A DNA stretch of 36,200 nucleotides from Octopus sinensis (GCF_006345805.1 NW_021837024.1:1-36200); one strand, 5' to 3'; numbered from the stretch's first letter, positions 8,137-29,531 are shown. Notes: a model not told the origin generated them from the letters alone. Program-made: numbers and translations.

Positions 8137-8181
8137 GCCAGAGAGCAATAAAGCATGACGAAGGAATTAAGGGCGAACTGT

Positions 8182-8292
8182 GAAACGGAGGTAAAGAATA
8201 CGCAAACCACCCGTTTTCGGCGTCACCTTAACCCTGAACCCTAAACCTACCCCTAACCCTAATCACCGAGTGTGCGTGTTGTTTACCTTCGC
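8182..8292. mobile_element. Small TIR element with telomere-like core
   Basis: Inverted repeats 8186-8207 / 8270-8291 (18/22 match); CGAACTGT at 8174-8181 and 8293-8300; degenerate CCCTAA units 8226-8262. Confidence 0.6.
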
Positions 8293-8314
8293 CGAACTGT
8301 TGTTTATCACAAGC

Positions 8315-8490
8315 GTACTTAGAGTCAAAGACATTCTAGCCGTGACCATCTCATCTTTTGTGTGTGGTGCGGGGGACTAGATGTGTAGTATCTAATGTGT
8401 CTTCCGTTTTTTTAAGACGGTAGACCGTAATTTGGAGGAGATTTGACATCTTTTTCTAGCAAATAATGCAAACATTCGAAGACTCCATGA
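8315..8490 (-). mobile_element. Family D repeat
   Basis: 'gtcaaagacattctagccgtgaccatc...ttttaagacggtag...ggaggagatttg...tttctagc'. Confidence 0.65.
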
Positions 8491-9179
8491 GAAAGTGGTA
8501 AAGGGGATATAGTGTGTGTGTGTGTGTTTGTGTTTGTGTATTTGTGTGTGTGTGCGTATGTTTGTTTGCGTGTGTGTGTGTGTGTTAGTGATACAAAATG
8601 AACTCAGAATAGAGGACTGACTGGAAGAGAGCGAGGAAGAGTGAGTAATATCGTGTGAGTGAAAGACAGAGAGAGAGAGAGAGAGAGATGTGTGTGTAGG
8701 CGTTTAGATATGGAAAAATAGAAAAAGAAAGAGCTGCGTTTAGGGTGAAGAGAAAAAGAGGGGAGAGTAAATTATGGTGAGAGAGAGAGAGATGAGTAGG
8801 GGTTTATAGAGGGTGAGTTATAGTTGTGGGCAGAAGGGAGAGTAAATGATAGTAAGAGAGAGAGGTGGAGTGTAGAGATGGAGAGAGATGGTGGAAGCTA
8901 TAAAGATCTGTATCGGATGGGAAATGAAAAATGATGACAGGACGTGGGAGGAGAACGATGAGTGACGAAGGAGGAGGTAATGTACCAGAAGAGGAGGAGG
9001 TGGTAGGATGAAAAGATGAGTGTGGTGGTGATGATGATGAGCGGGGAGAAGGGGAAGGAGAAAAGGACCGATGATGCGAAAGAAACCGAGGGGTTGGTGA
9101 TAGGGAAATCGAAGGAGAAACAGTGAGGAGAAGAGGAGGAAGCAAAGACAGTTTATGAATATGTAGAGAGAAATAAAAC

Positions 9180-9181
9180 GA

Positions 9182-9230
<49 letters not shown>

Positions 9231-9285
9231 GATAGATAGATAGATAGATAGACAGACAGAGATAGATAGATAGATAGACAGACAG

Positions 9286-9344
<59 letters not shown>

Positions 9345-9347
9345 CAG

Positions 9348-9378
<31 letters not shown>

Positions 9379-9380
9379 CA
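9180..9380. repeat. (GATA)n/(GACA)n compound microsatellite
   Basis: Directly visible. Confidence 0.97.
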
Positions 9381-9647
9381 AAGGGGAGAGATGATGAGGA
9401 AGACAGTAAATGAAAAAGGTGCGTATTGATGAGAGTGAGAGAAAGAAATAGAGTGAAAGATTGTGAGGAAAAGAGCGAAGTGGGAGTAGCATGTAACAGA
9501 TAATGGATAACTAAGAATCGATATTAGTAAACAGGTTCGTCGAAGACGTACAGTCGGCGTTGTTTGGTAGATTTTGACTGCTGCAATTACTATCTTTTCC
9601 ATAACACACTGTCGTGCTCCTTGGAGAAGTGAGTAGTATTATTACAC

Positions 9648-9681
<34 letters not shown>

Positions 9682-10074
9682 ACTCTCTCTCTCTCTCTGT
9701 CTCTCTCTCTTTCTTTTTCTCCCTCCACTGGTTGCACACAACACGCAACAAACATACCTGCTATTTCTTTGAAGTTCCTACGAAGATAAGGTAGGACTAA
9801 ACGTATGTTGACGTCTGTCGGGTTTTTTTAAAAACACTTTCACTCGTAAAATATCACTATATAAGAGGAGCGTGCCGTCGGAAGGGTTAGTAAACCTTTT
9901 GTTATTTTCCTTTTCTTTTCCTTTTTTTTTTCCTCATTTTTTTTTTTTCTTCTTTCGTGTGTGTGTGTAAACCCGTACACAATTTATAGACTGTTTTTGT
10001 GATGTTCCACTCATGTCTACCCCTGTGGAAAACAAAAAAACACCATTATTATTATCAATTATGAACATGTTGCT

Positions 10075-10320
10075 ATTCGTTGTTTTGTATAAGCGCGCGT
10101 CAGCTCTGATCCATCTATGACCAAAACCGTTCCAGCTGTGACCATACGTCTTATTTTTTTCATTCTTATTTTTAATGTATCCCTAAAAGAAATACTGTAT
10201 TTGTGAGTACAATATCGAATATTCCATTCTTATATTTAAGATAGTTTGGTCTTATTTGAGGGAGTTTCCTGCTGCTGCTTCTAGCACGTTCAACAATCAT
10301 GTAGTCTCCTCTCTCCGTGT
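10075..10320 (-). mobile_element. Family D repeat
   Basis: 'ctatgaccaaaaccgttccagctgtgaccat...ttgagggagtttcctgctgctgcttctagcacg'. Confidence 0.65.
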
Positions 10321-10430
10321 TGTGTATTTACATATAATTTGTATATGTACACGCATAGATACACATATGACACAAACTCACATACATACATACATACATA
10401 CATACATACATACATACATACATACATGTG

Positions 10431-10475
<45 letters not shown>

Positions 10476-10477
10476 TC

Positions 10478-10897
10478 TTTTACTCTTTTACTTATTTCAG
10501 TCATTTGACTGTGGCCATGCTGGAGCACCGCCTTTAAAAAATATCACATGGCAGCGGTGGGATATATATATATATATATTACTCTTTTTTTTTTACTCTC
10601 TTACTTGTTTCAGTCATTTGACTGCGGCCATGCTGGAGCACCACCTTTAGTCGAGCAAATCGACCCCAGGACTTATTCTTTGGAAGCCTAGTACATATTC
10701 TATCGGTCTCTTTTGCCGATCCGCGATGTTGGGGGGGGGGACAAACAAAGACACAAACATATACACACACATACATATATACACACATATATATACGACG
10801 GGCTTCTTTCAGTTTCCGTCTACCAAATCCACTAACAAGGTTTTGGTCGACCCGAGGCTATAGTAGAAGACACTTGCCCAAGGTGCCACGCAGTGGG
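10478..10897 (-). mobile_element. SINE A with duplicated 3' end (10478-10535 and from ~10590)
   Basis: 'tttactc.tttact..tttcagtcatttgactg.ggccatgctggagcacc.ccttta' occurs twice; second copy runs to 'gtgccacgcagtggga'. Confidence 0.85.
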
Positions 10898-10923
10898 AAT
10901 ATATATATATCTATATATATATA

Positions 10924-10977
<54 letters not shown>

Positions 10978-11019
10978 ATGTGTATGTATGTATGTATGTA
11001 TGTATGTATGGGGTTGGTT

Positions 11020-11240
11020 TCTGTTTAGTCGCAGTTGCGCTCTAATCGGGCATATTTTACCTATGCTCAAAGACATTTCTACCGTGACCATCCATCATTT
11101 CTTTTAAGACAGGGTGGCTATCTCTGATGTGTTATCCAACGTGTTTTTGTTCTATAAAAGGCAGTGGGTTGATAATTAGAGTGAGATTTGGCTGCTATTT
11201 CTAACAGGTTGAACGACCGTGAAGAGGTCGCTCCTATGCC
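11020..11240 (-). mobile_element. Family D repeat
   Basis: 'ctcaaagacatttctaccgtgaccatcc...gagatttggctgctatttctaacaggttgaacgacc'. Confidence 0.7.
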
Positions 11241-11269
11241 TATCATTATTGTAATCACAAATACTACAA

Positions 11270-11735
11270 TCTGGCAGAATCGTTCGCGCGTCGGACAAAA
11301 TGCTCAGCGGCAGTTTTTCCGACACACTGCGTTCAGAGTTCAAACCCCACCGAGGTCAGCTTAGCTTTTTCATCCTTTTGGATTTAATAAAATAAAGTAC
11401 CAGTCAAGTACTGGGGTCAATGCAATCGACTTACTCCACCTTTATCCTCAAAACTACTGGATTTGTGTCAAAATTCGAAAAAATTATTCTTTTCTACTCT
11501 AGGCACAAGGCCCGAAATTTTTTTTGGGGGGGGGGAAGTCGATTAGGTTGACCCCAGTACGCAACTGGTACTTAATTTATCGACCCTGAAAGGATGAAAG
11601 ACAAAGTCGACCTCGGTGGTATTTGAACTCTGATCATAAAGACAGACAAAATGCCTATTTCTTTACTACCCACAAGGGGCTAAACACAGAGGGGACAAAC
11701 AAACGGATTAAGTCGATTGTATCGACCCCAGTGCG
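11270..11735. mobile_element. Two SINE B copies in opposite orientation (+ 11270-11475; - 11490-11735)
   Basis: Plus head 'ctggcagaatcgttcgcgcg', minus body 'gaaaggatgaaagacaaagtcgacctcgg'. Confidence 0.8.
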
Positions 11736-11864
11736 TGTCCAAGTTACGATCATCTCTTCTTTCTTTTGGGTGCAGTCTAGCTAGGACTACGTTTTTCAAT
11801 GTGATGGGCAAACTCAAAAGAATTTGGTCGCTATTTCTCGCAAACGACCTCAAACAAGCTCTGA

Positions 11865-12290
11865 AGTTGTTGTTGTTGTTGCTGTTGCTACGGGGCCCAG
11901 GTCAACTCCGAATGAGTAACCCTATGATAAAAAGCATTTCACTCTTGACCAGTTCATCTTTTCCCTATGTCTAGAGAAATCCAGGACCACATTGTGTAAC
12001 GTATCCTATTTAAGACGAGTGGATATGATTTGAAGAAGATTTAGCTGCTATATCTAGCAGGTGGGATGATTACGAAGTCTCAGTTGTATGTTGTTGCTGT
12101 TGTTGTTGTTGTTTAATCCTGTGTCATCCCTTACCGAACAACTCAATCATAAAAAGTATTCCAGCCGAGATCATCCAGTCCTTTCCTTTGCGCAGAGAGA
12201 ACTCGGGGCAACAATGTCCAGCGCGTCCGGCTGCTATTTCTAGCATGTTGAGCAACCAAATTGAGGCTTTGTCATAACTTCGTGTTGAAC
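11865..12290 (-). mobile_element. Two adjacent family D copies, each with a (GTT)n end
   Basis: (GTT)n at ~11866 and ~12088; 'agatttagctgctatatctagcagg' and 'cggctgctatttctagcatgttgagc'. Confidence 0.65.
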
Positions 12291-12965
12291 ACTCACCGAA
12301 TGAATACAAATGCATACCAAAAATGACAGGCGTCATCGTCTGTATATTTATTTGATTAGCGATGCTTAAATTGTGATTTTCTGTTGTTAACCGGTGATAA
12401 GAAAAGCTTCTTTCAATAATATATATTTTTTCCTTGTTATATTTTCTTTTCCGCTGTTAACATAATTCAAACCCTACTTCTAAAAGTGCAGAAGTCATTC
12501 ACATTGAAGTCATTCACGTGAAGGGCAGGCAGTGTTTCATTGTATGGTGGTCTTAGCGAAAGAGGTTGTGTGGTGGACCAGATTGACAGGGCTGGAGACA
12601 GATACAGTATCTGAGATACTGTGCTCTTTGATCAAGCCCTCATAAACTTTTTCAAGTTTCTTTTGCAAAGGAAAGTGAGGGTAGAAAGAGAAGTGCTGCG
12701 TCTCAGCAATTTTGTTGAAAAGTGGGGGGAATGTGCCAAAACTGGTTCGATTGAACGGACAACGGGGAGAAAGCTCTTGCCCTAGTGATAAGGGCCTCCG
12801 TGGTTTTGTGGAGTTTCTTCGAGAAGCTCTCAGAAGTTTTTTTTTTTTGGGGGGGGGGGGGTAAGTTTCCGTTGTTAAAATTTATTTTATGTAACCCCAC
12901 ACTGTACTGTCTCGTACGGCCTTCAATGTTTTTTGTGGACCCACAATGGTCAATAAAGAAAACAT

Positions 12966-13175
12966 CCTAAAGGCGACGAGTTGGCGGAATCGTTAGCATG
13001 CCGGACAAAATGCTTAACAGCATTTCGTCTGGCTTTATGTTCTGAATTCCCCCGAGGTCAACTTTGCCTTTCATCCTTTCAGGGTCGATGAAATAAGTAC
13101 CAGTTGAGGACTGGGGTCGATGAAATTGACTTATCCCTTCCCCTGAATTTTCTGGCCTTGTGCCAAAACTAGAAA
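12966..13175 (+). mobile_element. SINE B (tail-2 type)
   Basis: 'aaggcgacgagttggcggaatcgttagc...ttgcctttcatcctttcagggtcgatgaaataagtaccag...ggccttgtgccaaaactagaaa'. Confidence 0.85.
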
Positions 13176-13245
13176 CCATTATTATCATTATTATTATTAT
13201 TATTATTGAGTGAGAGAGCAGTTCATGCCATCAAAGTGACACTGG

Positions 13246-13277
<32 letters not shown>

Positions 13278-13483
13278 TCTTCCCGTCGCTACGTTCTGAG
13301 TTTAAATTTCAAAGGGAACCTAGGGTCAAAGCTTATTGGAAGGTGAGGGGAAGGCCAGCTGATACATCGATCCGGGACCTTGACATTCAGAGAGGGGTCC
13401 TTGACGATCTACTTTGGCCTTCTCGAAGAAAAAATATTTGTTCATTTAAGCAAAAATATGACAAGTTTTAAACACAGATTTAT

Positions 13484-15056
13484 TCAGTCAATGATATAAT
13501 TACCATTTCCATCTTGTGGCAGGAGATATTCTTTTCTACTCTAAGCACAAGACCCGAAATTTTGGGGCAGGGGCCAGTCGATTAGATTGACCTCCGTATG
13601 CAACTGGTACTTAATTTATCGACTCCGAAAGGATGAAAGGCAAAGTCGACCTCGGCGGAATTTGTACTCAGAACGTAGCGGCAGACGAAATACCTATTTC
13701 TTTACTACCCACAAAGGGCTAAACACAGAGAGGACAAACAAGGACAGACAAACGGATTAAGTCAATTATATCGACCCCAGTGCGTAACTGGTATTTAATT
13801 TATCAACCCCGAAAGGATGAAAGGCAAAGTCGACCTCGGCGGAATTTGAACTCAGAACGTAGCGGCAGACGAAATACCTATTTCTTTACTGCCCACAAGG
13901 GCTTACACACAGAGGGGACAAACAAGGACAGACAAACGGATTAGGTCGATTATATCGACCCCAGTGTGTAATTGGTACTTTATTTATTGACCCCGAAAGG
14001 ATGAAAGGCGAAGTCGACATCGGCGGAATTTGAACTCAGAACGTAACGGCAGACGAAATACGGCTACGCATTTCGCCTGGCGTGCTAAAGTTGCTGCCAG
14101 CTCGCCGCCTTAGAGAGATACTAAAGCCTCCGCTCAAAGAATTTCTTGTCTTTACTAGCGAAAATCTCATTCAGATGAATTTGTACATCCTCTTCAGAAT
14201 TAAAAATCTGTCCATTCAACATTCGTTGAAATAAATGAGAATCCGAAGGCGCAAGATCGTGTGAATTATAGCGTGCAGCAAAACTTCCCAGCCAAGCTCC
14301 AGTAACTTCTTCCGTGTCAACAGAAAAATGTATTGGTCCAGCATTGTCGAAATAAAGGACAATGTACTTATGATTAGTAAGTTCTGGATGATTCTGCTGA
14401 ATGGCTACGTCTAATATCTGGTGGGTCGCAGCTGGTGACAGTACGCATCCGAATTGATTGCTCTGTCCGTGGGAAGAAGCTCAGAAAAGATGGCACCTCC
14501 AGTTCCACCAAACTGAAAGTATAACTTTTTTCGGGTGGAATACTGCTTAAAAGGTTATTTGTGTTATTTCGCGCACTTCCATCAAGATCGCTTGCGCTTT
14601 ACTATCAATTTTTCATCCCTTGTCACCATTCTCTTCGAAAAAATAAAGATCGTTTCCTTCAGGTTTCTGCAACAAATCGCAGATAGAAATCTGTTGGACG
14701 CGGTGAGTTTCATTCAATTGATGTGGGACCCAAGCATCAAGCTTGTTGACGTAACCAAGTTGATGCAGATGGTTTTCAACACTCGATTTGGATATTTGGA
14801 GAATATCTGTGATCACCCTGGTCGTATAACGTGGGGTCGGTATCGACTAACTTCTTCATTTTATTGATGTTAATCTCAGTTGACCGACCAGAGCGAGGGG
14901 CAACGTGAACCGAGAAAATTCCCGATCGAAATCGTGAAAACCATTTCTAGTACACAACGCATATTTGCCTACAGGTTTCCGCCACTTTCTTGCCTATTCT
15001 AAAATAATTTTTTTAAAAAGCATGAGACGTCAATAACATTCGTTTTGGTTCTCCAT
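13484..15056 (-). pseudogene. Nearly full-length mariner (DD34D) transposase pseudogene, interrupted at ~13530-14110
   Basis: ATG at 15056: MENQNE..RLMLF..KWFSRFRSG..PRSGR..ISKSSVENHLHQLGYVNKLDAWVPHQL (WVPHEL motif)..DNAGP..LELGWEVL..DLAPSDSHLF (YSPDLAPSD motif)..FFERRL; resumes after the SINE with ..DGNGNYIID* (stop at 13484). Many stops and frameshifts. Confidence 0.92.
13530..14110 (-). mobile_element. SINE B concatemer (head + three 184-bp-spaced bodies + tail-2)
   Basis: ATGAAAGGC(A/G)AAGTCGAC at 13633, 13817, 14001; head 'gccagctcgccgcctt' at ~14096-14111. Confidence 0.92.
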
Positions 15057-15239
15057 TTTCAAGATGAGCCCAAGACACGAAATACGATCCAGCTTCGCGT
15101 CAAACTACGTTGAAGCGTCAAGTATCTAACGAGTGCGCATGTGCAAGGGACAGACTGAACTTAACAACTTACTAAAGTGCTTGAAGTTTCGTGCCGACAA
15201 AATATCAGCCGGACGCGTGTATGCGTCAGTAAATGTCAC

Positions 15240-15432
15240 TACCATTGCTTGACAACTAGTGTTGGTTTATTTACATCCCTGTAACTAGGGTTCAGCGAAA
15301 AATTTAGAAAAAAGAATAAGTACCGTACTTTGGGCAAATAAGTACGGGGGTCGATTTGTTCGACTAAACCCTTCAAAGCTGTGCCCCAACATGGCCGCTG
15401 TCCAATGACTGAAAAAAGTAAAAGATAAGAGA
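15240..15432 (+). mobile_element. SINE A 3' half
   Basis: 'cttgacaactagtgttggttta...ggggtcgatttgttcgactaa...catggccgc...aatgactgaaa'. Confidence 0.75.
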
Positions 15433-15581
15433 TAAACTCTTCAGATTCTTCAGAAGCTATCGTGTTGAGATGCCTTGGATTTGAAGAATATTCACGATCT
15501 TCTGTAGCTGCAAGAAGCCATTTTCGAATGAATTGTTCCTACGTCCGTTATATATTGGATTTGCAACAAAGAGTTAACAAA

Positions 15582-15968: not shown

Positions 15969-16116
15969 TTGTCAATAAACGTCTTTGAAAATAATAAAGT
16001 GTTTGCTAACACAGGAGTTTGCCACGATATGAAACCGAGCGAGACACAGCTCTATAATCACCACGGAAAAAATATAATATAATTAAATCATATTGTACAT
16101 TGCTCAATAAACATAA

Positions 16117-16684: not shown

Positions 16685-16975
16685 ATCACTTTGATCACTT
16701 TGACCGACCAGTCCGTCAGGCGTCCATTTGACACCGCTGGTCACAGCACGCTGTCCACTCCTCTCTGGATCGCGCCTTTCTCATCCACGTGATCCCAATC
16801 GTCCTCTTGAAATCGTCACTCCACCGTCGTGGAGGTCTTCCGGGTGGTCTTTTCCGCTCACGCGGGTACCACTCGACAACTGCGTGCGTCCACCGATTAT
16901 CGGTGAGCCGGGCGACGTGTCCAGCCCATCTATACTTGCTATATATCGGAGCACTTTAGCTCTTATTTCTAGCAT
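16685..16975 (-). mobile_element. 5'-truncated RTE-clade LINE (ORF C-terminus, short 3' UTR, tandem tail)
   Basis: 16955-16716 translates without stops: SAPIYSKYRWAGHVARLTDNRWTHAVVEWYPRERKRPPGRPPRRWSDDFKRTIGITWMRKARSREEWTACCDQRCQMDA*; the WAGHVAR..RW..W.P..R..GRP..RW pattern is typical of RTE ORF ends; tail CAAAGTGATCAAAGTGAT. Confidence 0.92.
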
Positions 16976-19298: not shown

Positions 19299-19850
19299 AC
19301 AGGCGCTGGCATGGCTGTGTGATTAAGATGTCCGCTTTACAACCATTTGGTTTCGAGTTAAGTCCCACTGGATCTTTTCGGTTTGAACGGCAGTTTTTTT
19401 TTCTAGCGGTGTCATATGAAATTGTCACCCATAATTATGACCCTAGTATCGATCTATTGCATTTCAATCTGTTTTAGGGTTAGAGTTAGGGTTAGGGTTA
19501 GAGTTAGGGTTAGGGTTAGGGTTAGGGTTAAGGGCGGGGGAAAGGGTATCTTTTTTCTTCACAAATGTAAATAAACCCAATCTGTTTCTTAAACGAGGAA
19601 CATATTCATACGGCACAGAATGTTTTCACCTCAATAGGCGTCATTGATTGGTTGAAATTGCAGAAATTGAAGAAAAAAACAACAAATATCTTACAAACTA
19701 TAGAATTTTCTCAATAAAGCCAAGAGAAAAAGATGTTTTATAAACACATTCTACCAGTATACGAAGTTTAAAAGTGTTTAGTTACGTGGAAATTATTTTA
19801 AAAAACTGCCGGTCAAACCGAAAAGATCCGTCCCACTACACGGCATCTTA
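19299..19850 (+). mobile_element. SINE A head split by the TIR element at 19370-19829
   Basis: 'aggcgctggcatggctgtgtgattaag...gagttaagtcccact' resumes as 'gtcccactacacggcatctt'. Confidence 0.8.
19370..19829. mobile_element. 460-bp non-autonomous TIR transposon, 8-bp TSD, GG termini (Merlin-like; hAT not excluded), internal telomeric repeat
   Basis: 30-bp TIR GGATCTTTTCGGTTTGA(A/C)CGGCAGTTTTTT with 1 mismatch; TSD GTCCCACT 19362-19369 and 19830-19837; nine TTAG(G/A)G units 19474-19527. Confidence 0.93.
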
Positions 19851-19854
19851 GAAG

Positions 19855-20010
19855 TTTCCTATACACACGTCAGATGTCGAAGTGGTCGCAAAGTAACGTG
19901 AGATGAAGTGCTTTGGGCCCGAGAATACAATGTACCGTCTGGTACGAGAATCGAACCCATGATGTCGCGATCCTGAGTGTAACGCGCTAACCACTGTATG
20001 CCATGCACTC
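19855..20010 (-). mobile_element. SINE C
   Basis: Reverse complement 'gtgcatggcatacagtggttagcgcg...atgggttcgattctcgtacc...gcgaccacttcgacatctgac', homologous to 1030-1190. Confidence 0.75.
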
Positions 20011-21060: not shown

Positions 21061-21114
21061 TATGTATGTATATGTATATATCTGTGTGTGAGGCCATATA
21101 TGGTGCATATTTTT

Positions 21115-21263
21115 GATGCTACTTTAGCGTGCGGTCTACCTGGCCAGTTACACTTTTGTGTGCAATTGAACTCACGCCCTAACGCTAACCCTAATTTTAA
21201 AACACTAATCCGCATCCCAGATTAGGTCATTTCTCAGAGTTGATCGTTCGCTCCAGTAGCACC
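21115..21263. mobile_element. 149-bp TIR element with 9-bp TSD and telomere-like core
   Basis: TSD CATATTTTT 21106-21114 and 21264-21272; 24-bp TIR 17/24 match (GATGCTACT.. / ..AGTAGCACC); CCCTAA CGCTAA CCCTAA 21177-21194. Confidence 0.8.
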
Positions 21264-21361
21264 CATATTTTTCTCCTACACGCAATACACATCCATAATG
21301 GCGTTTTATTATACAAGCAAACGTGTGCGAGCGAGCGCGCACACAGAGTTTAATAATATCA

Positions 21362-21580
21362 GTTTCAAATTTTGGCACAAGGCCAGAAATTTCGGAGGCA
21401 GGTGTCTAGTTGATTAAATCGACTCCATTACTCAGCTGGTACTTATGTTATCGATCTCGTAAGGAAGAAAGACAAAGTCGACACTTCGGAGGAATTTGAA
21501 CTCAGAACGTAAAGACGGACGAAATACCCGCAAACAATTTATCCGGCATGCTAACTACTCTGCCGGCTCGTTTGCCTTGT
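21362..21580 (-). mobile_element. SINE B (tail-2 type)
   Basis: 'tttcaaattttggcacaaggccag...gaatttgaactcagaacgtaaagacggacgaaatacc...gccggctcg'. Confidence 0.82.
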
Positions 21581-22169
21581 AATAATTTCTATTAATGATA
21601 AACACCCTCTGTTTATTGACAGAAGTGTATCTGTCATAAAATGCAATATGTCACAAACCCGGACGTAAAGATGAACGGACATAACGCTCTTTATATCCGT
21701 GTTTCTTTAACAACCAAAACAAGCAACGAGAATCGAAGAATGAATGAATAAAAAAACTATTTTTTTTCTTTTTCTTATTTTACACATTTCAATATAAATA
21801 ATCATTAATATGACATGGCTTTAACACAATATCTTTAGTGAACGAATCCTCATTCAACAAGTTGTATATGATCGATGAAAAGCGTCTTTGTGTGTGTGTG
21901 TGTGTTTTATGTACACGCATTTGCAAGCAGTGTGTGTGTATGTGTGTGTGTGTGGATGTATATACGTCTGTGTGTGCGCACGTGCACGTGCTTTAGTCGG
22001 TGTTGGAAGTGGGGGGAAAGGACATAGAGGGAGACACTGTTCAGCTTATGGAGCAGTGTCGAGGATTAAAGCGCCCAAGGAACGACTTCTCCCGCCACTT
22101 CGTTCTCAACCTCACCGACTTCAAGAGTTCTGAAAAACCCATTCCCGCCAGTTTCTGGGAATGTGAAGG

Positions 22170-22233
<64 letters not shown>

Positions 22234-22720
22234 GCCTCTGTGTGTGTGTGTATGTATCTGTGCATCAGTTTTCATTATATGTGGACAAACTTCAAAACCT
22301 ATTTCTTTCTACCATTGCGCCATTGAAAACGAAACCAGCTCAGGGAATTAGAGACAGACAGAAAGAGACAGGGTAAAAGAGAGATAGACAGACAGACAGA
22401 CATAGCCAGAGAGAGAGAGAGACCGAGATAGAGGAGGAAGAGAGAAAGAGAAAGGTGGAGCGAGAAAAAGAAAGAATGAGATGCAGAAATCGTATCTTCA
22501 AAAACTAATTATTATGCGTTGGAATCATATTTAATTTAATTACAAATGATTTTTCAATTAGCGAGCGATGTGGTTAACAACTGACAATAACAGCTGTTGA
22601 CCATATTTTAGTCTTTGTGTTAGAGGAAGAGAGAGAGAGAGAGAGAGAGTAAGATGGAGAGAAAAAAAGAGGCAGAGACAGACAGTTGGAGATGAAAATT
22701 TGATGAAAAATCCTCAAGGT

Positions 22721-23095
22721 CAGTGGTTTCCGAAGTGGGCGCCACAGCCCCCTCCGGGAGCGGTGGATAGACCCAGGGGGGCACTGAAGAAAAGTAGGGG
22801 TAGCCAAAAGGGACGGTGGATCTATAAATATCTAAATAATGCTTTCATTAAATTAGGTTTTTGTTTTGTGTGTGTGTGTGTTCTTTCTTTCTTTTCTTTT
22901 ATTTGTTTCAGTCATTTGACTGCGGCCATGCTGGAGCACCGCCTTTAGTCAAGCAAATCGACCCCAGTACTTATTCTATCGGTTCTCTTTTGCCGAACCG
23001 CTAAGTTACGGGGACGTAAACACACGAGCATCGGTTGTCAAGCGATGTTGGGGGGACAAACACAGACACACAAACATATATACACACATACATAT

Positions 23096-23141
<46 letters not shown>

Positions 23142-23496
23142 ATATATATATAATATACGACGGGCTTATTTCAGTTTCCGTCTACCAAATTCACTCACAA
23201 GGCTTTGGTCGGCGCGAGGTTATAGTAGAAGACACTTGCCCAAGGTGCCACACAGTGGGACTGAACCCGGAACCATGTGGTTGGTAAGCAAGCTACTTGC
23301 CACACAGCCTTTTGTTTTTATTAATGTTTTTATTATTTCACTGTTATAAGCTTATACAATCCATTTTTAGAGTAATATTTATAAATTACCATCCATCATA
23401 AACTAGTCTAGTCGTGATATCTCACTCACAACTTAGGTGGGTGTTAGGCATAACAACTACTTAAAAGTGGGACATAAAGAAGGTTAAAAACCACTG
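22721..23496. mobile_element. hAT-type MITE interrupted by a SINE A
   Basis: Ends CAGTGGTTT.. / ..AAACCACTG; flanks CTCAAGGT (22713-20) and CTATAGGT (23497-504), 6/8 identical. Confidence 0.65.
22885..23308 (-). mobile_element. SINE A, near full length
   Basis: Complete tail to head 'gggactgaacccggaaccatgtggttggtaagcaagctacttgccacacagcc'. Confidence 0.92.
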
Positions 23497-23898
23497 CTAT
23501 AGGTGAATATTTACCTGGTTTGTGCACCGCGTGGGTTGAATGCAGAAGGGGGCGGTAAATATGGTGAAATGGTGCCTTTTTTCTGCCGTATAAGGGTGAT
23601 ACAAACTAACTGAGCTCATGCAACTTAGGAAATCCTTTTACTGCTATCTTGTTCTGCTTGTTTTGTTATAATTCTTGGCTGCTTTGTAAAAACATTAAAC
23701 AGCCGCCAGTTCCTAACTTGTTCTTTGTTTTATCGTTTTTGGAAGAAGGAAAAGGGAAGTTAATCTCAGTCTTTGTCTTTTGCTATAATTGTATTCACAT
23801 CTAGAATCCTTCAACACACGGCCTTGTCCGAATTCTTTTATCGTAATTTTCTTCACTTTCAGAATCCTTCATAGGAATATTAGCAACAATACAAGACC

Positions 23899-24115
23899 TT
23901 GGACTAAATATTGTTTGCTAGCATAACATGGTAGTCCCAGTTTAGGACGAATGTTGCTGTAATTTAGCCCCAGGAGACATCGTCTCCAGCTGGCTATACG
24001 ACACGATCTGAGCCGTATAGCCAGCTGGAGACGATGTCACCTGGAGCTAAATTACAGTAACATTCGTCCTAAACCGGGACTGCCATGTTATGTTGGCAAA
24101 CAATCTTTAGTCCAA
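23899..24115. repeat. Fold-back inverted repeat, 102-bp arms, 8 mismatches, 13-nt loop
   Basis: 23899-24000 vs 24014-24115; innermost 25 bp are perfect. Confidence 0.95.
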
Positions 24116-24139
24116 AATACTGTTGGTGAATATCTCTCG

Positions 24140-24368
24140 TTGTGAGATATATGTGTCTTTGTGTTTGTGTTTGATCGCCACCACCGCTTGACTAGGGTTG
24201 GCTTGTTTACGTCCCCGTAACTTAGCGGTTCGCCACAGTGAATGATAGAATAAGTATCATGCTTTAAAATGTGGGCTGGGGTTGATTTATTCGGTTTAAC
24301 CTTTCAAGGTGGTGCCCCAACATGGCCGCAGCCCAATGTCTGAAACAAGTAAAAGATTAAAGATTAAA
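24140..24368 (+). mobile_element. SINE A 3' half
   Basis: 'gtgtctttgtgtttg...acgtccccgtaacttagcggttcg...catggccgcag...gaaacaagtaaaagattaaagattaaaa'. Confidence 0.8.
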
Positions 24369-24469
24369 AAGTAAGCTAAAGGCCCATTCGTTGGAAAGAT
24401 GAATTGCTTTCAAGATTTCTGCTACCTTGGAGCCAAATTGTGGCCTGCAATTCGGAGCATACATGAACT

Positions 24470-24825
24470 GGTTTCAAATTTTGGTACAAGGCCAGTAGTT
24501 TCAAGGGAAGGGGTTAGTTGATTACATCGACCCTAGTACTTGGCTGGTACTTTATTTTATCGCCCCCGTAAGGATGTAAAGGCAAAGTCGACTTCGGCGG
24601 TTTGAACACAGAACGTAAAGGGCCGCAAGAAATACCGCAGAGCATTTTGGCCAGAATGCTAAGGATTCCGCCAGCTCGCTACCTCAGTCACCTTTGTATG
24701 TTAAAGGTAAATGAAGGCGACGAACTGGCAGAATCGTTGTTATACCGGACAAAATGTTTAACCACATTTCTTACGGTTTTAAGTTCTGAGTACAAATTAC
24801 TCGGCGGTCGACTTCGCTTTTCATC
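24470..24825. mobile_element. Two divergent SINE B copies (- 24470-24685; + 24712-24825)
   Basis: 'aaggcaaagtcgacttcggcgg...ccgccagctcgc' and 'aaggcgacgaactggcagaatcgttg'. Confidence 0.75.
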
Positions 24826-25114
24826 AGTTTTTCTTTGTTAAAAGAACGAGTTTTTTGAAAATCAAAATGAAATTCCCTTGATATTGTTTCGTTACCACTA
24901 TGAGCATCGACTGAAAATCTCTGTGGGAAATCTTAATGAAATACTTCTATTATTATTTCATTCAGGTGTAGAATATTTTATAGAAATGTATCGTTAGTAG
25001 CTTAATATAATAAATATTAAATCTACTCCAGGACTCCACTGGTTCTACATTGCACCAACTCTGCAAGAATAAAAAGCAAAGATAAGCTCAGCAGGGCTTA
25101 AAAGTAATTGCATT

Positions 25115-25330
25115 TGTTGTTGCTAAGCTGCAGGTAAGCTATAACCGAGCAGACTTGTGATCAAAAACGTTCCAATCGTGACCATCTAGTTTTTTGGGGG
25201 GTTTTTTAGTTGTTATTTTTTAAATTTGTATTTAGAAGTCCATTATTGAATCCCTTCTCCTCTCTTAAGATGATATAGGGTACGATTTGTACGTATAGTA
25301 AAGAGCTTGTTGCATAGTGCTCGCGTGCTC
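25115..25330 (-). mobile_element. Family D repeat, degenerate
   Basis: 'ttgttgttgc...tgatcaaaaacgttccaatcgtgaccatc'. Confidence 0.55.
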
Positions 25331-25581
25331 TACAACTCGTCGGAAAAGAGATAAAAGACGGGGATAGAAAGCAGCAATAATTAGAGTTAATGAAAGACAG
25401 CAATGAAGCCTAGAGTACATGCACACTGCACAGAATAAAACTCAAAAATAGAAAAAGTGAACAGGAAAAGAAACAAGGATGCATAGACACATTAAGAGTT
25501 GAGTGGTGAATTTCGAGAAGCATTCAAGATTTGAAAGCCTCGGTGTCTTGACAGGTAACAACTGACGCAGTTTATCTAGAA

Positions 25582-25929
25582 CAGAGGTTCTCAACCGAAG
25601 TTTATGTGACCCCTGAGGGTCCATATAAGATTTTTGCGGGGTCCATGCAACAAAGTAGTAAATTGGGGATCCACAATAGTATCTGAAGGGCCTTGAAATC
25701 AATTTTGCTTTAGATGTATGTATTGGTATGTATTTCAAGAAACAACTAAGTTCTTTCTTTAACATTTTACATGGTTCAACCTACACAAGTTAATGTGTGA
25801 AAAACAAAATGGCAATTTTGGAAGAAGTTTCTATAAAACTAGCTTTCAAACATCAAATGGCTATGGAGGTCCACCAGAATAAATCAGTAATCGAAGGGGT
25901 CCATAGATAAAAATGATTGAGAATCCCTA
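25582..25929. mobile_element. hAT (Charlie/Buster-type) MITE with perfect 8-bp TSD
   Basis: TIR CAGAGGTTCTCAACC / GATTGAGAATCCCTA (11/15); TSD ATCTAGAA 25574-81 and 25930-37 fits the NTCTAGAN preference of Charlie-group hATs. Confidence 0.88.
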
Positions 25930-26399
25930 ATCTAGAACAAACATGGCAACCTTTTTTGAGAAGCGGACCCTATAAGGAATTGCTTATCATCAGATTTGCC
26001 GCACAACTAAAGAAAAACATGAAGGTAATTTCTCGTTAGGCATGCCACTCAGAAACCCGCGCAGGCCGCAGATTGCCAATGAATGATCAAGAACATTGTT
26101 ATTTTTGGTACCCTTCCTGTTGGAACTTCGTTTTAGATGTCCCATATCTCAAGGGAAGGATAAAAGTAACGGAAGTGAAGCGAAAAACCCTAAACATTTT
26201 TAATTTTAGGGTAAAAAATCGTAATTTCCGTTGTTTGAAAACAAGTAATATGGTCCTTTATTAAAGAAAGGAATGTGGTTGATGGCTTGGCCCAGCAACT
26301 GTCCTAGGCTGGGAACATAAACATGTGCAGTGCATCCATCCTGACCAGTGCCCTGTCCTGAAGCAAATAAAGCATTTTCAGAAAGCAAAAATTAACGAA

Positions 26400-26762
26400 C
26401 TTGCTACTCCTTCGGGTTGAGGGGGTAAAGATCCCTTCGATCCCGAATGACCATGGGATGGCACCAAGAAAGTTATCCTGCGAGGCACAAGTCCGGGCAA
26501 GGTTGTTTATGGAAGACCAGCAGTCGCTCATGCATACTGGCCTCCACTCTCCACACCACTGATGTTATCTAATGGAAAGGCAAAGGGGCCGATACAGCTT
26601 GGCACCAGCGACGTCGCAACTCATTTCTACAGAAGAGTGGACTGGAGCAACGTGAAATAAAGTGTGTTGCTCAAGAATACAACGTACAGCCCACTCTGAG
26701 AATCGAACTCACTATTTCATGATTGTGAGCCCATTGCTCTAACCATTAATCCATGCGCCTTC
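26400..26762 (-). mobile_element. SINE family E (tRNA-derived)
   Basis: Reverse complement: AAGGCGCATGGATTAATGGTTAGAGC (A-box-like), GAGTTCGATTCTC (B-box), then 'ttcttgagcaacacactttatttcacgttgctccagtccac'. Confidence 0.75.
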
Positions 26763-26994
26763 TTTCATCTGAGTACATAATGGTACTTCAAAAATATCTA
26801 TTTATGAAGATGGGAACCCCAATAAATGGTGGTAATTTTGATAATCATCTAACTATGAGAACAACAGACAGGCCGCTTAAGCAAAAATCCGTTCCAAAAC
26901 GGAAGAATAGGGGGAGAAAAACTACCCTTTTTCCTTTTTTATGAGGTATTAGACGTCTAGTCCGAAACTTCGCCTCATTTCCCATTTCTTCTAC

Positions 26995-27070
26995 GGCCTG
27001 TAGAGTGTAATTTGAAGTTGTTTCACTGCTACTTCTAGCAGTCGAGCGACCACGTCGAGGCTACCTTATT
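26995..27070 (-). mobile_element. Family D head fragment
   Basis: Reverse complement 'gcctcgacgtggtcgctcgactgctagaagtagcagtgaaa'. Confidence 0.65.
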
Positions 27071-27272
27071 GTATTTATTCAAATTTCTATGATCTTGGAT
27101 ATAGAATACTTCTTGAAAAATTACGAAATGTAACGTGTCAATGTTCTGTGTGTGTGTACGTGTGAGTGTGCGCGTGCGCGCTCGTGTGATGCACGTGCGA
27201 GCGTGTGTGCTGTGCGTTGTGTATGATATAAGATATGCGTATTAGAATCCGTGTATATGTGTCTCTAAATGT

Positions 27273-27306
<34 letters not shown>

Positions 27307-27524
27307 CTGCTTTCGATGGTAGCGGGAGGTCCGAGGAAGGTAGGGGATTCTGAACATTCTGAAGACAATTCCCAGTTCCCATAACAGATATCAGTCACTT
27401 CCTATCCGGTCTGAAAGCGAAGTAAAGTAGGTACCACTCTCCTATTATGCACACAACACGCACAGACGTGTGTATATATATATATATATATGTATGTATA
27501 TATATATATTTTCTTTTATGTATA

Positions 27525-27556
<32 letters not shown>

Positions 27557-27775
27557 CTTTTATTGTTTTATTTGTTTCAATCATTTGACTGCGGCCATGC
27601 TGGAGCACCGCATTTAGTCGTACAAAACGACCCCAGGACTTATTCTTTGTAAGCCTAGTAACTTATTCTATCAGTCTCTTTTGCCGAACCGCTAAGTTAC
27701 GGGGGACGTAGACCCGCCACCATCGTTGTTAAGCGATGGTGGTGGGGGAGGGGACAAACATACAACACACATGCA
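27557..27775 (-). mobile_element. SINE A 3' half
   Basis: 'tttgtttcaatcatttgactgcggccatgctggagcacc...gccgaaccgctaagttacggg'. Confidence 0.85.
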
Positions 27776-27780
27776 TACAT

Positions 27781-27833
<53 letters not shown>

Positions 27834-27856
27834 TGTATGTATGTATGTATGTATGT

Positions 27857-27904
<48 letters not shown>

Positions 27905-28043
27905 ATATATATATATAAATTAAATAATAAGGGTGAAAAATTTAATATTAATTTGATTAATATCAATTTAAAACCAGTGGCCTAGTATATGAAAAATCTG
28001 AAGATTCAGAAAAATTATATTACATACTTCTTATATGTATGTA

Positions 28044-28074
<31 letters not shown>

Positions 28075-28257
28075 TGCAGCGTGGAAGGTGTTTGTAAGCT
28101 ATTTAAGAAACACGCAAAAGCCGTTCAATTCACTTCAACATTTAAGTCTTATTTGTCAAAATATTTTCATCGCTAAAATCCGCGACCTGTTCACTGACAA
28201 AAATCCGTGCTGCATCTCAGATCAAATCACTTGCTATGCGAGTACACCTCCGTATAT

Positions 28258-28373
28258 ATATACGACGGGCTTCTTTCAGTTTCCGTCCAAATCTACTCAC
28301 AAGGCTTTGGTCGGCCCGAGGGCACTTGCCCAAGGTGCCACGCGGTGGGACTGAACTCGGAACCACGCGGCTG
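28258..28373 (-). mobile_element. SINE A head half
   Basis: 'tacgacgggcttctttcagtttccgtc...gcacttgcccaaggtgccacgcggtgggactgaactcggaacc'. Confidence 0.85.
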
Positions 28374-28376
28374 CTA

Positions 28377-28415
<39 letters not shown>

Positions 28416-28973
28416 GTAGTGGCTGTATGATGTATATGTATGAATGTATGTGTGCATGCATGCATGCATGTATGTATGTATGTATGTACGTATGTATGTA
28501 TGTATGTATGTATGTATACCTGTCCACTCGAGTCCGAAGTCTACCATATTTGACTATAAAGAGAATTGCGCTTTCGACAATGGTTCTTAAAAACCTGCCA
28601 TACTCTTTAATGTCTTTTGCCTGATCCTACGAAGTACAATTACATACATACATTACATTACATATATATATACAGTATAGTACATATATCATTCTTTTAC
28701 ATGAAAAGTGTTGATAGTGACTTCGAAATTTCGGACGATGAAAGTTAAGACGGCCGAACCTTCGAAGTCACTGTAGAAGAAGAATAAGCATGTACACTGC
28801 GAAAAGTATTGAATAATCCTTCAATTAAATGTGAAATTGTTTTTGTATACAGTTTGTGATTCACAAAAACGTCTAAACTGATCGTCTAAACTGATCTCCG
28901 AGTAACAATCACAAACTGGCTGATTGCCAATATGAAAATATAAACTCTAACAACGTATCGAGAACCTCTTTTC

Positions 28974-29531
28974 GGAAAGACTTCCGCAAGCCCACCATCA
29001 CCACCACCACCACCATTTTCTCCCAAATTTGTTTATTTTTGTAAATTTTTTTTTTTTTTTTTTTTGCCAAAAAGCCCCGTTTTCAGATACGGAGGTTCCG
29101 GAAAATTGCCAAAAATCGGCATTGTGAAATTTTTCCCCCAACTTCAATTTTGACTTTTTTCCCCAACACTAAACCTAAAACCCTAACCCTAAAACCCAAA
29201 ACGTAACTACAGAAATGTTTTGAAATTTTTGTCCGAATCATGATTTAGAATAAAAAATTCTTAAAAAATAATTTCACAAAGACTTTTGGAATTTTTTTTT
29301 TTTTTTTCAGAATCATAATCTCCGTATTTTACCGCATATTTTGAAAAAAAAAATTGTAAAAAAAGTTTAAAATGAATAAAATGGTGTTGGCGGGATGGTA
29401 ATTTAGAAATGTCGATTTTTGCCAATTTGTTTGCAGATTCGCATTCCCCGTAGCCGAAAAGTGGGATTTGTGTCGAAAAAAAAATTTTTTAAGGGTGGTT
29501 CTTTTGGGTGGGGACGGGCGGAAGTCTTGCC
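28974..29531. mobile_element. ~560-bp element with long imperfect TIRs, GG termini and telomere-like core
   Basis: Terminal GG(A/C)AAGACTTCCGC (28974-87 / 29518-31); subterminal AAATTG(C/G)CAAAAATCG(G/A)CATT (~29104-24 / ~29408-28); CCCTAACCCTAA 29181-92; no TSD found. Confidence 0.65.

What the first reader, a model, noticed from the sequence alone, without database searches (positions are those of the whole stretch)
8174..29531. Four unrelated TIR elements each carry a telomere-repeat core: a possible convergent 'telomeric MITE' system
Seen: elements at 8182-8292, 19370-19829, 21115-21263 and 28974-29531 share no TIR sequence, yet each has TTAGGG/CCCTAA units in its interior. Three have 8-9 bp flanking direct repeats; two end GG...CC and a third GA...CC. 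I found no comparable TTAGGG/CCCTAA runs outside such elements in this window. Established: 8-9 bp TSDs with 5'-GG termini fit the Merlin/IS1016 superfamily (hAT ends usually start CAG/TAG); TTAGGG is the usual molluscan telomere repeat. Inference: the core is a selected cis-element (binding site for telomere-repeat-binding proteins, G4/nucleosome effect, or transposase enhancer) and these MITEs disperse interstitial telomeric sequence genome-wide.
Basis: partly seen in the sequence, partly recalled or inferred. Interest (0 to 1): 0.8.

Follow-up and report, generated by a model that had tools for sequence, protein, structure and literature searches.

The report
Telomere repeats inside octopus miniature transposons
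In this stretch of octopus DNA, all four short runs of the chromosome-end repeat TTAGGG sit inside small, unrelated cut-and-paste transposon remnants; this is not chance, but there is no evidence yet that the repeats do anything for the transposons.

Summary
The window has exactly four telomere-repeat sites: 13 near-perfect 12-mers against 0.11 expected. They lie at 8226-8262, 19474-19533, 21177-21194 and 29165-29206. Each sits in the interior of a segment bounded by inverted repeats, and three of those segments have exact 8-9 bp flanking duplications.

An unbiased scan for duplication plus inverted repeat ranks elements E2, E1 and E3 first, third and fifth of 1002 candidates. The chance that 3 of 4 random sites fall in such structures is about 3e-4. 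E2 is a proven insertion, because a paralogous SINE copy in Octopus bimaculoides is uninterrupted at that point. The four share nothing except the repeat.

The interpretation, a selected and convergent "telomeric MITE system", is untested. No other copies could be retrieved, so family consensuses could not be built.

Several results lean toward passive carriage:
- The cores decay roughly in step with the inverted repeats.
- In E2, a 10-bp direct repeat brackets the run plus 47 nt, as a nested insertion would (P about 0.004-0.02).
- Three other inverted-repeat elements in the window lack a core.
- 54 kb of O. bimaculoides DNA has none.

The most likely reading is that telomerase-made filler was joined into breaks inside Merlin-like miniature transposons and then hitch-hiked. 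This is a variant of known things and is moderately interesting.

The parts
8182..8292 (.). E1: 111-bp hairpin-like miniature TIR element
   Evidence: Bounded by exact 8-bp direct repeats and 22-nt arms matching 18 of 22. Folds as a roughly 30-bp stem with the telomeric run in the loop, z = -2.3. Ranks third of 1002 in the unbiased duplication-plus-TIR scan.
8174..8181 (.). E1 target-site duplication, left copy (CGAACTGT). The right copy is at 8293-8300.
   Evidence: family D3, both copies 100% identical.
8226..8262 (-). E1 interstitial telomeric run, with the G-strand on the minus strand. About 6 degenerate units, about 89% pure.
   Evidence: It is flanked by the 5-bp word TCACC on both sides, which is not statistically significant.
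19370..19829 (.). E2: 460-bp non-autonomous TIR element with Merlin-like structure (GG...CC termini, 30-bp TIR, 8-bp duplication)
   Evidence: TIRs 19370-19399 / 19800-19829 match 29 of 30. Ranks first in the scan with score 27.5, where Markov simulations reach 12 in only 1% of runs. Fold z = -5.3. It interrupts a SINE. The paralogous SINE copy L002:12846-12911 runs straight through the site with a single GTCCCACT.
19362..19369 (.). E2 target-site duplication, left copy (GTCCCACT). The right copy is at 19830-19837.
   Evidence: family D4. Confirmed as a duplication by the paralogous empty site.
19474..19533 (+). E2 telomeric run: (TTAGGG) about 9.5 units with two TTAGAG variants, about 95% pure
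19465..19474 (+). Left copy of the 10-bp direct repeat CAATCTGTTT. The right copy is at 19578-19587. Together they bracket the run plus a 47-nt non-telomeric tail, as a nested-insertion duplication would.
   Evidence: family D3. The word occurs only at these two places in the window. A bracketing repeat of 10 bp or more has P = 0.004 under a Markov null and 0.023 under a real-window null.
19531..19577 (+). 47-nt non-telomeric tail of the bracketed segment, of unknown origin. The coordinates overlap the last 3 nt of the run.
   Evidence: No Rfam match. No stable hairpin. No match in the window or fetched loci beyond 13 nt. No match in metagenome or prokaryote contigs.
21115..21263 (.). E3: 149-bp candidate miniature TIR element (weaker case)
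   Evidence: Exact 9-bp direct repeat CATATTTTT at 21106-21114 and 21264-21272. Gapped TIR matches 20 of 26. Ranks fifth of 1002, behind two AT-microsatellite artefacts. Fold z = -1.5, not significant.
21177..21194 (-). E3 telomeric run: 3 units with one mismatch (CCCTAACGCTAACCCTAA on the plus strand), at the centre of the element
28974..29531 (.). E4: 558-bp old, degenerate foldback-type element with no detectable target duplication. Its ends are uncertain.
   Evidence: Arms 29056-29131 / 29400-29484 are about 75% identical with gaps. Segments are partly permuted or duplicated (29344-29399). Terminal 11-mers lie at 28977-28987 and 29518-29528. Fold z = -2.8.
29165..29206 (-). E4 telomeric run: perfect 14-nt core at 29179-29192 inside a degenerate 42-nt array, about 79% pure

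Best explanation
The window is Octopus DNA. It holds four unrelated, non-coding copies of cut-and-paste DNA transposons, that is, miniature inverted-repeat elements. E2 has the structure of the Merlin superfamily. E1 and E3 have 8-9 bp duplications compatible with it. E4 is an old foldback. Each carries a short interstitial telomeric sequence in its interior.

The most likely origin of those sequences is passive. Telomerase, or a related repair pathway, added TTAGGG repeats to a free 3' end at a break inside the element, and the break was then rejoined. The break could have been the internal deletion or gap repair that created the miniature element. It could also have been a later staggered break, as the 10-bp bracket in E2 suggests. 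Afterwards the repeat travelled with the element as a passenger.

Shown here: the anatomy, the non-random association, and that E2 is a true insertion.
Inferred: the role of telomerase, the timing, and whether the run belongs to each family or only to these copies.
For: - Organism: peptides derived from the window's SINEs hit only O. bimaculoides proteins. The SINEs are shared with O. bimaculoides loci at 75-91% identity. TTAGGG is reported as an octopus telomere repeat (PMC6160780).
- There are four runs and no more, far above chance. Three lie inside the top non-artefact candidates of an unbiased scan, P = 2.8e-4.
- E2 is a real insertion with an 8-bp duplication.
- In E2, a 10-bp direct repeat abuts the first base of the run and recurs after a 47-nt tail. 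This is the signature of a secondary insertion into a pre-existing element.
- Run purity falls with TIR identity. TIR identity / run purity: E2 97/95, E1 82/89, E3 77/94, E4 about 75/79. The runs are therefore about as old as the copies and show no sign of special preservation.
- The run's position is not fixed. It is central in E1 and E3, off-centre in E2 and E4, and found in either orientation.
- Other TIR elements in the window lack a run.
- Short telomeric tracts inserted at break sites are documented in vertebrates, including inside repetitive elements (PMC8537989).
- MITEs that carry hitch-hiking microsatellites are documented (cited in PMC6947457).
Against: - No family consensus could be built, so a conserved or selected core is not excluded.
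- Random break repair does not by itself explain why all four runs are in TIR elements, which cover only about 4-6% of the window. A bias is needed, either at element birth or because such elements break often, and neither was shown.
- The 10-bp bracket is only suggestive once four elements have been examined: P about 0.015-0.09 after correction.
- E1's 5-bp bracket is not significant, and E3 and E4 have none.
- No orthologous empty site is available for any run.
Confidence: 0.5

Rival explanations
1. The telomeric core is a selected cis-element, such as a binding site for a TRF-like protein, a G-quadruplex or nucleosome signal, or a transposase enhancer. Several MITE families acquired it convergently, and these MITEs spread interstitial telomeric sites across the genome.
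For: - Four of four runs lie in TIR elements and the association is non-random.
- The four elements share nothing but the run.
- Every run keeps at least two adjacent units with at most one mismatch, enough in principle for a double-Myb site.
- Merlin is unusually abundant in O. bimaculoides (PMC8101967).
Against: - There is no conservation test.
- Cores are degenerate in step with the arms.
- Core position, length (18-60 nt) and orientation all vary.
- G-quadruplex potential is not shared. From the run sequences printed, E3 has only two GGG tracts.
- The E2 run looks secondarily inserted.
- Three other TIR elements in the window lack it.
- No such element and no run occurs in 54 kb of O. bimaculoides DNA.
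Confidence: 0.13
2. The insertions are specific to these copies. Hairpin-prone TIR elements are break hot spots, for example through cruciform or loop cleavage or aberrant transposase nicks. Telomerase healed those breaks locally, so the run belongs to these copies and not to their families.
For: - In E1 and E3 the run sits in the hairpin loop.
- E2 has the 10-bp bracket.
- Vertebrate telomeric insertions are sometimes found inside repeats (PMC8537989).
Against: - The arms of E1 and E3 are short and imperfect (18 of 22 and 20 of 26), so they are poor cruciform formers.
- The two long, near-perfect foldbacks at 2905-3155 and 23899-24115 should be the most fragile, yet they carry no run.
- Four independent hits within 36 kb would need a very strong bias.
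Confidence: 0.17
3. Shared ancestry. All four are derivatives of one superfamily, such as octopus Merlin elements, whose autonomous members carry an internal telomere-like array. The unlike TIRs reflect family divergence, not independent acquisition.
For: - The 8-9 bp duplications and G-initial termini are compatible with a single superfamily.
- O. bimaculoides has 191 Merlin transposase sequences.
Against: - An unselected microsatellite should not outlast complete divergence of the TIRs.
- E1 (GA/GC) and one end of E3 lack the defining GG terminus.
- No transposase remnant is linked to any of the four.
Confidence: 0.08
4. Over-reading. Only E2, and perhaps E1, is a real transposon. The boundaries of E3 and E4 were fitted around the runs after the fact, and the window is simply rich in telomeric remnants, for example because it is near a chromosome end.
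For: - E3's TIR score is matched by microsatellite artefacts, and its fold is no better than shuffles.
- E4 has no duplication and has permuted arms.
- The run density here, 4 in 36 kb, is well above that of the control loci, 0 in 54 kb.
Against: - E1, E2 and E3 emerge from a scan that never looked at telomeric sequence, P = 2.8e-4.
- E4's non-low-complexity arms are real: 29 nt at 83% and 37 nt at 78%.
Confidence: 0.1

Closest known systems
Short interstitial telomeric sequences inserted at double-strand breaks, including TERC-ITS (Nergadze/Giulotto laboratory; PMC8537989)
   Same: These are short tracts of exact or near-exact telomeric hexamers at internal sites. They are sometimes inside repetitive elements and sometimes accompanied by extra non-telomeric sequence. 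E2 has a run plus a 47-nt tail bracketed by a short duplication.
   Different: They are described in vertebrates and show no preference for transposons. Here all four lie in TIR elements. No orthologous empty site is available, and no cephalopod telomerase RNA is available to test whether the tail derives from it. The tail has no template-adjacent hairpin. A hairpin of that kind, the P1.1 stem, is reported as universal in protostome telomerase RNAs (PMC8480181).
MITEs carrying hitch-hiking microsatellites, such as the lepidopteran (GTCY)n MITEs of Coates et al. 2011 and the bivalve tandem-repeat MITE-like elements (cited in PMC6947457)
   Same: A small TIR element with a target duplication carries a simple repeat in its interior, which it can disperse passively.
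   Different: In those cases the repeat is a feature of one family's consensus. Here the repeat is the telomeric hexamer, it occurs in four unrelated elements, and family-level presence is unproven.
Merlin superfamily of DNA transposons (Feschotte 2004, as summarised in PMC8101967)
   Same: Merlin elements have 8-9 bp target duplications, TIRs of 24 bp or more, and terminal 5'-GG. E2 meets all three. Merlin is very abundant in O. bimaculoides.
   Different: No transposase partner was identified. E1 and one end of E3 lack GG. No telomeric core turned up in the Merlin paper read here or in the nine full-text searches run.
Ciliate telomere-bearing transposons: Oxytricha TBE (bioRxiv 10.1101/2025.03.17.643836) and Tetrahymena Tel-1 (Cherry and Blackburn 1985)
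   Same: DNA transposons with inverted repeats that carry telomeric repeats at internal chromosomal positions.
   Different: Tel-1's telomeric repeats are at the ends of the element (title of Cherry and Blackburn 1985), and from memory the same holds for TBE. From memory, both are tied to programmed genome rearrangement. Here the repeats are interior, and the organism is an animal.
Endonuclease-deficient Penelope-like retroelements, Athena and Coprina (PMC8557442)
   Same: They carry reverse-complement telomeric repeats at the 3' end. Read on the minus strand, the bracketed segment in E2 ends in (CCCTAA)n.
   Different: Those elements have an adjacent hammerhead ribozyme and attach to chromosome ends. 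No hammerhead or any other Rfam family matches here.

Membership tests
MITE / non-autonomous TIR DNA transposon | Terminal inverted repeats | tested here: met
   E2 29 of 30, E1 18 of 22, E3 20 of 26 with a gap, E4 long degenerate arms at about 75%. E3 and E4 are weak.
MITE / non-autonomous TIR DNA transposon | Target-site duplication directly flanking the TIRs | tested here: met
   Exact 8, 8 and 9 bp for E1, E2 and E3. Not met for E4.
MITE / non-autonomous TIR DNA transposon | Shown to be an insertion, against an empty site | tested here: met
   Shown for E2 only. The paralogous SINE copy L002:12846-12911 is continuous across the site with a single GTCCCACT. No empty site was found for E1 or E3.
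MITE / non-autonomous TIR DNA transposon | Small and non-coding | tested here: met
   The elements are 111-558 bp. They hold only short ORFs, and a composite translation of E2 finds no homologues.
MITE / non-autonomous TIR DNA transposon | Multi-copy family in the genome | tested here: inconclusive
   No second copy in the window or in 54 kb of O. bimaculoides DNA. No eukaryotic genome collection could be searched. The E2 TIR is absent from the metagenome, viral and prokaryote collections.
Merlin superfamily | 8- or 9-bp target-site duplication | tested here: met
   E1 8 bp, E2 8 bp, E3 9 bp. Definition taken from PMC8101967.
Merlin superfamily | Conserved terminal 5'-GG on both TIRs | tested here: inconclusive
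   Met by E2 (GG/GG). Met by E4 only at unverified ends. Not met by E1 (GA/GC). Half met by E3 (GA/GG).
Merlin superfamily | Autonomous partner with matching TIRs that encodes a DDE_Tnp_IS1595 transposase | not testable with these tools
The only transposase remnant seen in the window is mariner.
hAT superfamily | 8-bp duplication plus YARNG termini (the terminus consensus is from memory) | tested here: not met
   E1 and E2 have 8-bp duplications but start GAAAC/GCGAA and GGATC. A true hAT MITE in the same window, 25582-25929 with CAGAGG.../TAGGG..., shows what the signature looks like.
Break-site telomeric insertion (short ITS / TERC-ITS) | Tandem telomeric hexamers at an internal site | tested here: met
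Break-site telomeric insertion (short ITS / TERC-ITS) | Absent from an orthologous or ancestral empty locus, having been inserted in one step | not testable with these tools
   No related genomes or family copies were available. The only proxy is E2's 10-bp bracket.
Break-site telomeric insertion (short ITS / TERC-ITS) | Flanking fragment derived from the telomerase RNA | tested here: inconclusive
   No cephalopod telomerase RNA has been published. The 47-nt tail lacks a hairpin, has no Rfam hit, and is not found elsewhere.
Ciliate telomere-bearing elements (TBE, Tel-1) | Telomeric repeats at the extreme ends of the element | tested here: not met
   The runs are interior, 41-191 nt from the nearest end of the element (coordinates).
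EN-deficient Penelope-like element 3' end | Reverse-complement telomeric repeats next to a hammerhead ribozyme | tested here: not met
   No Rfam match at E <= 10 in 19300-19900 and none at gathering score in the whole window.

The most novel reading that the evidence does not exclude
In octopus, several unrelated families of Merlin-type miniature transposons each carry a telomeric core in their consensus, and together they account for most interstitial TTAGGG sites in the genome. The cause would be either that telomerase routinely supplies the filler when such elements are born by abortive gap repair, or that the core is kept because it recruits telomere-repeat-binding proteins. A side reading: the 47 nt next to the E2 run is a telomerase read-through product and so reports the 5' end of the still-unknown cephalopod telomerase RNA. 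I put that sub-reading at about 0.05, given that the tail has no template-adjacent hairpin.
Probability: 0.15. Interest if true: 0.75.

Novelty: new variant of a known kind. Interest (0 to 1): 0.45.

Why it matters
If family-level copies confirm it, this would be a documented route by which cut-and-paste transposons scatter telomere-repeat sites through an animal genome. Such sites could bind telomere proteins, break easily, or seed new telomeres. It would also link telomerase to the repair events that create miniature transposons.

Cephalopod genomes are heavily rearranged and rich in repeats, so a mobile source of interstitial telomeric sequence would bear on how their chromosomes evolve.

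If instead the runs are copy-specific scars, the finding is a small but clean example of break-site telomeric insertion outside vertebrates.

Tried and rejected
1. Exact look-ups of window ORFs to recover other copies or the source contig. An ORF spanning the E2 run was not on record, and none of 10 window ORFs is in the protein collection.

2. A composite six-frame translation of E2 searched against 5.8 billion proteins. No hit.

3. The E2 TIR as an exact pattern in the metagenome, viral and prokaryote collections. Zero matches. The 23-mer at the tail/run junction also gave zero.

4. A mariner remnant used as bait for octopus loci. It returned only distant relatives from other organisms, mostly mammals and an insect.

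5. SINE-derived peptides used as bait. These worked. They hit only O. bimaculoides proteins and gave two loci. Two further proteins had no contig on record. The 54-kb sample contains no copy of E1-E4 and no telomeric run. Its only high-scoring duplication-plus-TIR candidate is a 30-bp tandem repeat.

6. The idea that the 47-nt tail is telomerase RNA. No cephalopod telomerase RNA is in the literature held. The tail has no hairpin and no Rfam hit. I downgraded the idea.

7. E1's 5-bp bracket TCACC. Not significant, since P(5 bp or more) is about 0.9. I dropped it as evidence.

8. One family in disguise. Rejected at the sequence level. The 8-mer ACGGAGGT shared by E1 and E4, which I read by eye, is about what chance gives for sequences of these lengths.

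9. Pfam scans of 18 window ORFs for transposase remnants. Nothing.

10. Nine full-text literature searches for MITEs or DNA transposons with telomeric cores. No description found.

Full report
**What the window is.** The window is 39% GC and packed with microsatellites and tRNA-derived SINEs. It has no tRNA genes and no Rfam families. Peptides translated from its SINEs match only Octopus bimaculoides proteins, at 71-84% identity. Two O. bimaculoides loci fetched through those proteins are L001 and L002, from GCA_001194135.2. They share the SINE families with the window at 75-91% identity. The window is therefore Octopus DNA, from O. bimaculoides or a congener. (TTAGGG)n has been reported as an octopus telomere repeat (Adachi et al. 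2014, as cited in PMC6160780).

**Checking the observation.** A rotation-aware census of telomeric hexamers finds four clusters and nothing comparable elsewhere:
- 8229-8262, C-strand on the plus strand
- 19474-19530, G-strand on the plus strand, 9.5 units
- 21177-21194, C-strand
- 29179-29192, C-strand, inside a degenerate array at 29165-29206

The 12-mer TTAGGGTTAGGG with up to one mismatch occurs 13 times, all at these four sites. Shuffles give 0.11 on average.

The claimed boundaries are also there.
- E1 (8182-8292) has exact 8-bp CGAACTGT on both sides and arms matching 18 of 22.
- E2 (19370-19829) has arms matching 29 of 30 and exact 8-bp GTCCCACT on both sides.
- E3 (21115-21263) has exact 9-bp CATATTTTT on both sides and gapped arms matching 20 of 26.
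- E4 (28974-29531) has no flanking duplication. It has long degenerate arms at 29056-29131 / 29400-29484 and a terminal 11-mer on each side.

blastn-short shows that the four share no sequence except the run.

**Is the association more than hindsight?** I scanned the whole window for any exact 8-mer direct repeat 60-700 bp apart, with an inverted repeat starting within 3 nt of each copy. The scan made no reference to telomeric sequence. Of 1002 candidates, E2 ranks first (score 27.5), E1 third and E3 fifth. The second and fourth are AT-microsatellite artefacts. Only 4.2% of window positions lie inside a candidate scoring at least 8, yet three of the four runs do. P(at least 3 of 4) = 2.8e-4.

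E2 is independently confirmed as an insertion. It interrupts a SINE, and the paralogous SINE copy at L002:12846-12911 reads straight through the site with a single GTCCCACT.

E3 and E4 are weaker. E3's hairpin is no better than shuffles. E4 has no duplication, and its arm segments are partly permuted.

**Anatomy.** E1 folds as a stem of about 30 bp with the run filling the loop. E3's run is also central. In E2 and E4 it is off-centre.

In E2, a 10-bp direct repeat, CAATCTGTTT, sits at 19465-19474 and again at 19578-19587. These are its only two occurrences in the window. Its first copy ends exactly where the run begins. Its second copy follows a 47-nt non-telomeric tail. This is what a nested insertion with its own target duplication looks like. 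It implies a 347-bp ancestor of E2 without any run. The chance of such a bracket is 0.004 under a Markov null and 0.023 under a real-window null, per element. That is suggestive but not proof, since four elements were examined. E1's 5-bp bracket is not significant, and E3 and E4 have none.

TIR identity and run purity fall together:

| Element | TIR identity (%) | Run purity (%) |
|---|---|---|
| E2 | 97 | 95 |
| E1 | 82 | 89 |
| E3 | 77 | 94 |
| E4 | about 75 | 79 |

The runs are therefore about as old as the copies, and they are not visibly protected from decay.

**Controls.** The same window holds three other TIR elements without a run.
- A textbook hAT MITE at 25582-25929, with 8-bp duplication ATCTAGAA and termini CAGAGGTTCTCAAC / TAGGGATTCTCAAT.
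- A near-perfect foldback at 2905-3155, with arms matching 113 of 115.
- A second foldback at 23899-24115, with arms matching 94 of 102.

So the core is not a general property of TIR elements here. The most cruciform-prone elements are not the ones that carry it. The 54 kb of non-N O. bimaculoides DNA contains no telomeric run and no 8-bp-duplication MITE. Such elements are therefore either unevenly distributed or less common genome-wide than this window suggests.

**What could not be done.** The decisive test is whether each family's consensus carries the run and conserves it. That needs other genomic copies. No eukaryotic genome collection was searchable by DNA. Protein-based and pattern-based routes found no copy.

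**Mechanism.** The best-supported reading is that these are non-autonomous cut-and-paste elements with passenger telomeric tracts.

Short telomeric tracts are known to be joined into double-strand breaks in vertebrates. They are sometimes found inside repeats and sometimes come with extra sequence (PMC8537989). Miniature transposons arise by internal deletion during gap repair. Gap repair generates free 3' single strands, which telomerase could plausibly extend. Filler at that junction would give exactly the layout of E1 and E3: arm, short unique sequence, run, short unique sequence, arm. E2's bracket instead points to a later small insertion at a staggered break. In either case the run would then be copied passively, as happens with microsatellites in other MITEs (cited in PMC6947457).

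These steps are inferred. What is shown is the anatomy, the association and the insertion status of E2.

Core length (18-60 nt), position and orientation all vary. G-quadruplex capacity is not shared. Decay tracks the arms.

'Convergence' is also not established. E2 fits the published Merlin definition of 8-9 bp duplication, TIR of at least 24 bp and terminal GG. O. bimaculoides has 191 Merlin transposase sequences, the highest count the survey names among bilaterians (PMC8101967). A common superfamily origin therefore remains possible. Against it, E1 and one end of E3 lack the GG terminus.

**A lead that weakened.** Read on the minus strand, the bracketed E2 segment is 47 nt followed by (CCCTAA)n. 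That is the layout expected if telomerase ran past its template to the 5' end of its RNA. No cephalopod telomerase RNA has been published. Protostome telomerase RNAs are reported to have a template-adjacent hairpin, the P1.1 stem (PMC8480181). The 47 nt has no stable hairpin. It also has no Rfam match and no match in the collections that could be scanned. I keep this only as a low-probability side reading.

**Comparison with known systems.** The closest are break-site telomeric insertions, MITEs with hitch-hiking microsatellites, and Merlin MITEs. Ciliate telomere-bearing transposons carry the repeats at their ends, not inside. Endonuclease-deficient Penelope-like elements pair the repeats with a hammerhead ribozyme, which is absent here. 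Nine full-text searches found no description of MITEs with telomeric cores.

**Verdict.** The association is real within this window. The functional interpretation is untested and, on the single-copy evidence, less likely than passive carriage. This is a new variant of known phenomena and is moderately interesting. A straightforward genome-wide BLAST and census would settle it.

Noticed in passing
window 25582-25929: A textbook hAT-type MITE. It has an 8-bp target duplication ATCTAGAA and termini CAGAGGTTCTCAAC / TAGGGATTCTCAAT, with no telomeric run inside. Its right terminus plus the duplication happens to spell CCCTAA once.
   Followed up: partly
window 2905-3155 and 23899-24115: Two near-perfect foldback (palindromic) miniature elements. 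Their arms match 113 of 115 and 94 of 102, with loops of 19 and 13 nt. Neither has a telomeric run, although the first has a single ACCCTA at its loop centre. The first may have a TA target site.
   Followed up: partly
window 14124-14946, minus strand: A frameshifted remnant of a mariner transposase. The composite translation matches Mos1/SETMAR-type transposases (PF17906, PF01359) at E = 4e-44, but only at about 38% identity to proteins from mammals and insects.
   Followed up: partly
window 13602-14061 and 34937-35568: One tRNA-derived SINE family occurs as a 184-bp tandem (2.5 copies, 92% identical) and as a head-to-head inverted pair with 253-nt arms at 92%. Such arrangements produce long inverted repeats that are not TIR elements.
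   Followed up: no
window 26186-26212: A small palindrome made of single telomere-like units facing each other: AACCCTAAA, an 11-nt spacer, then TTTAGGGT. It could be chance or the remnant of a head-to-head telomeric site.
   Followed up: no
window 16719-16955, minus strand: An open frame reading ...RWAGHVARLTDNRWTHAVVEWYPRERKRPPGRPPRRWSDDF... From memory, this resembles the conserved C-terminal tail of LINE ORF2 proteins. Pfam gave no hit.
   Followed up: partly
window 7589-8136 and 9182-9378: Very long (TAGA)n / (ATAG)n arrays, about 135 and 51 units. The first ends 38 bp upstream of E1's target duplication. The window as a whole has more than 160 TRF calls.
   Followed up: no
L001 15770-15910: A tandem array with a 30-bp unit, GTCACCGACTGGTGACTAAACTAGTTGAGTC, in an intron of the O. 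bimaculoides kelch-like 10 gene. It mimics a duplication-plus-TIR structure in naive scans.
   Followed up: yes
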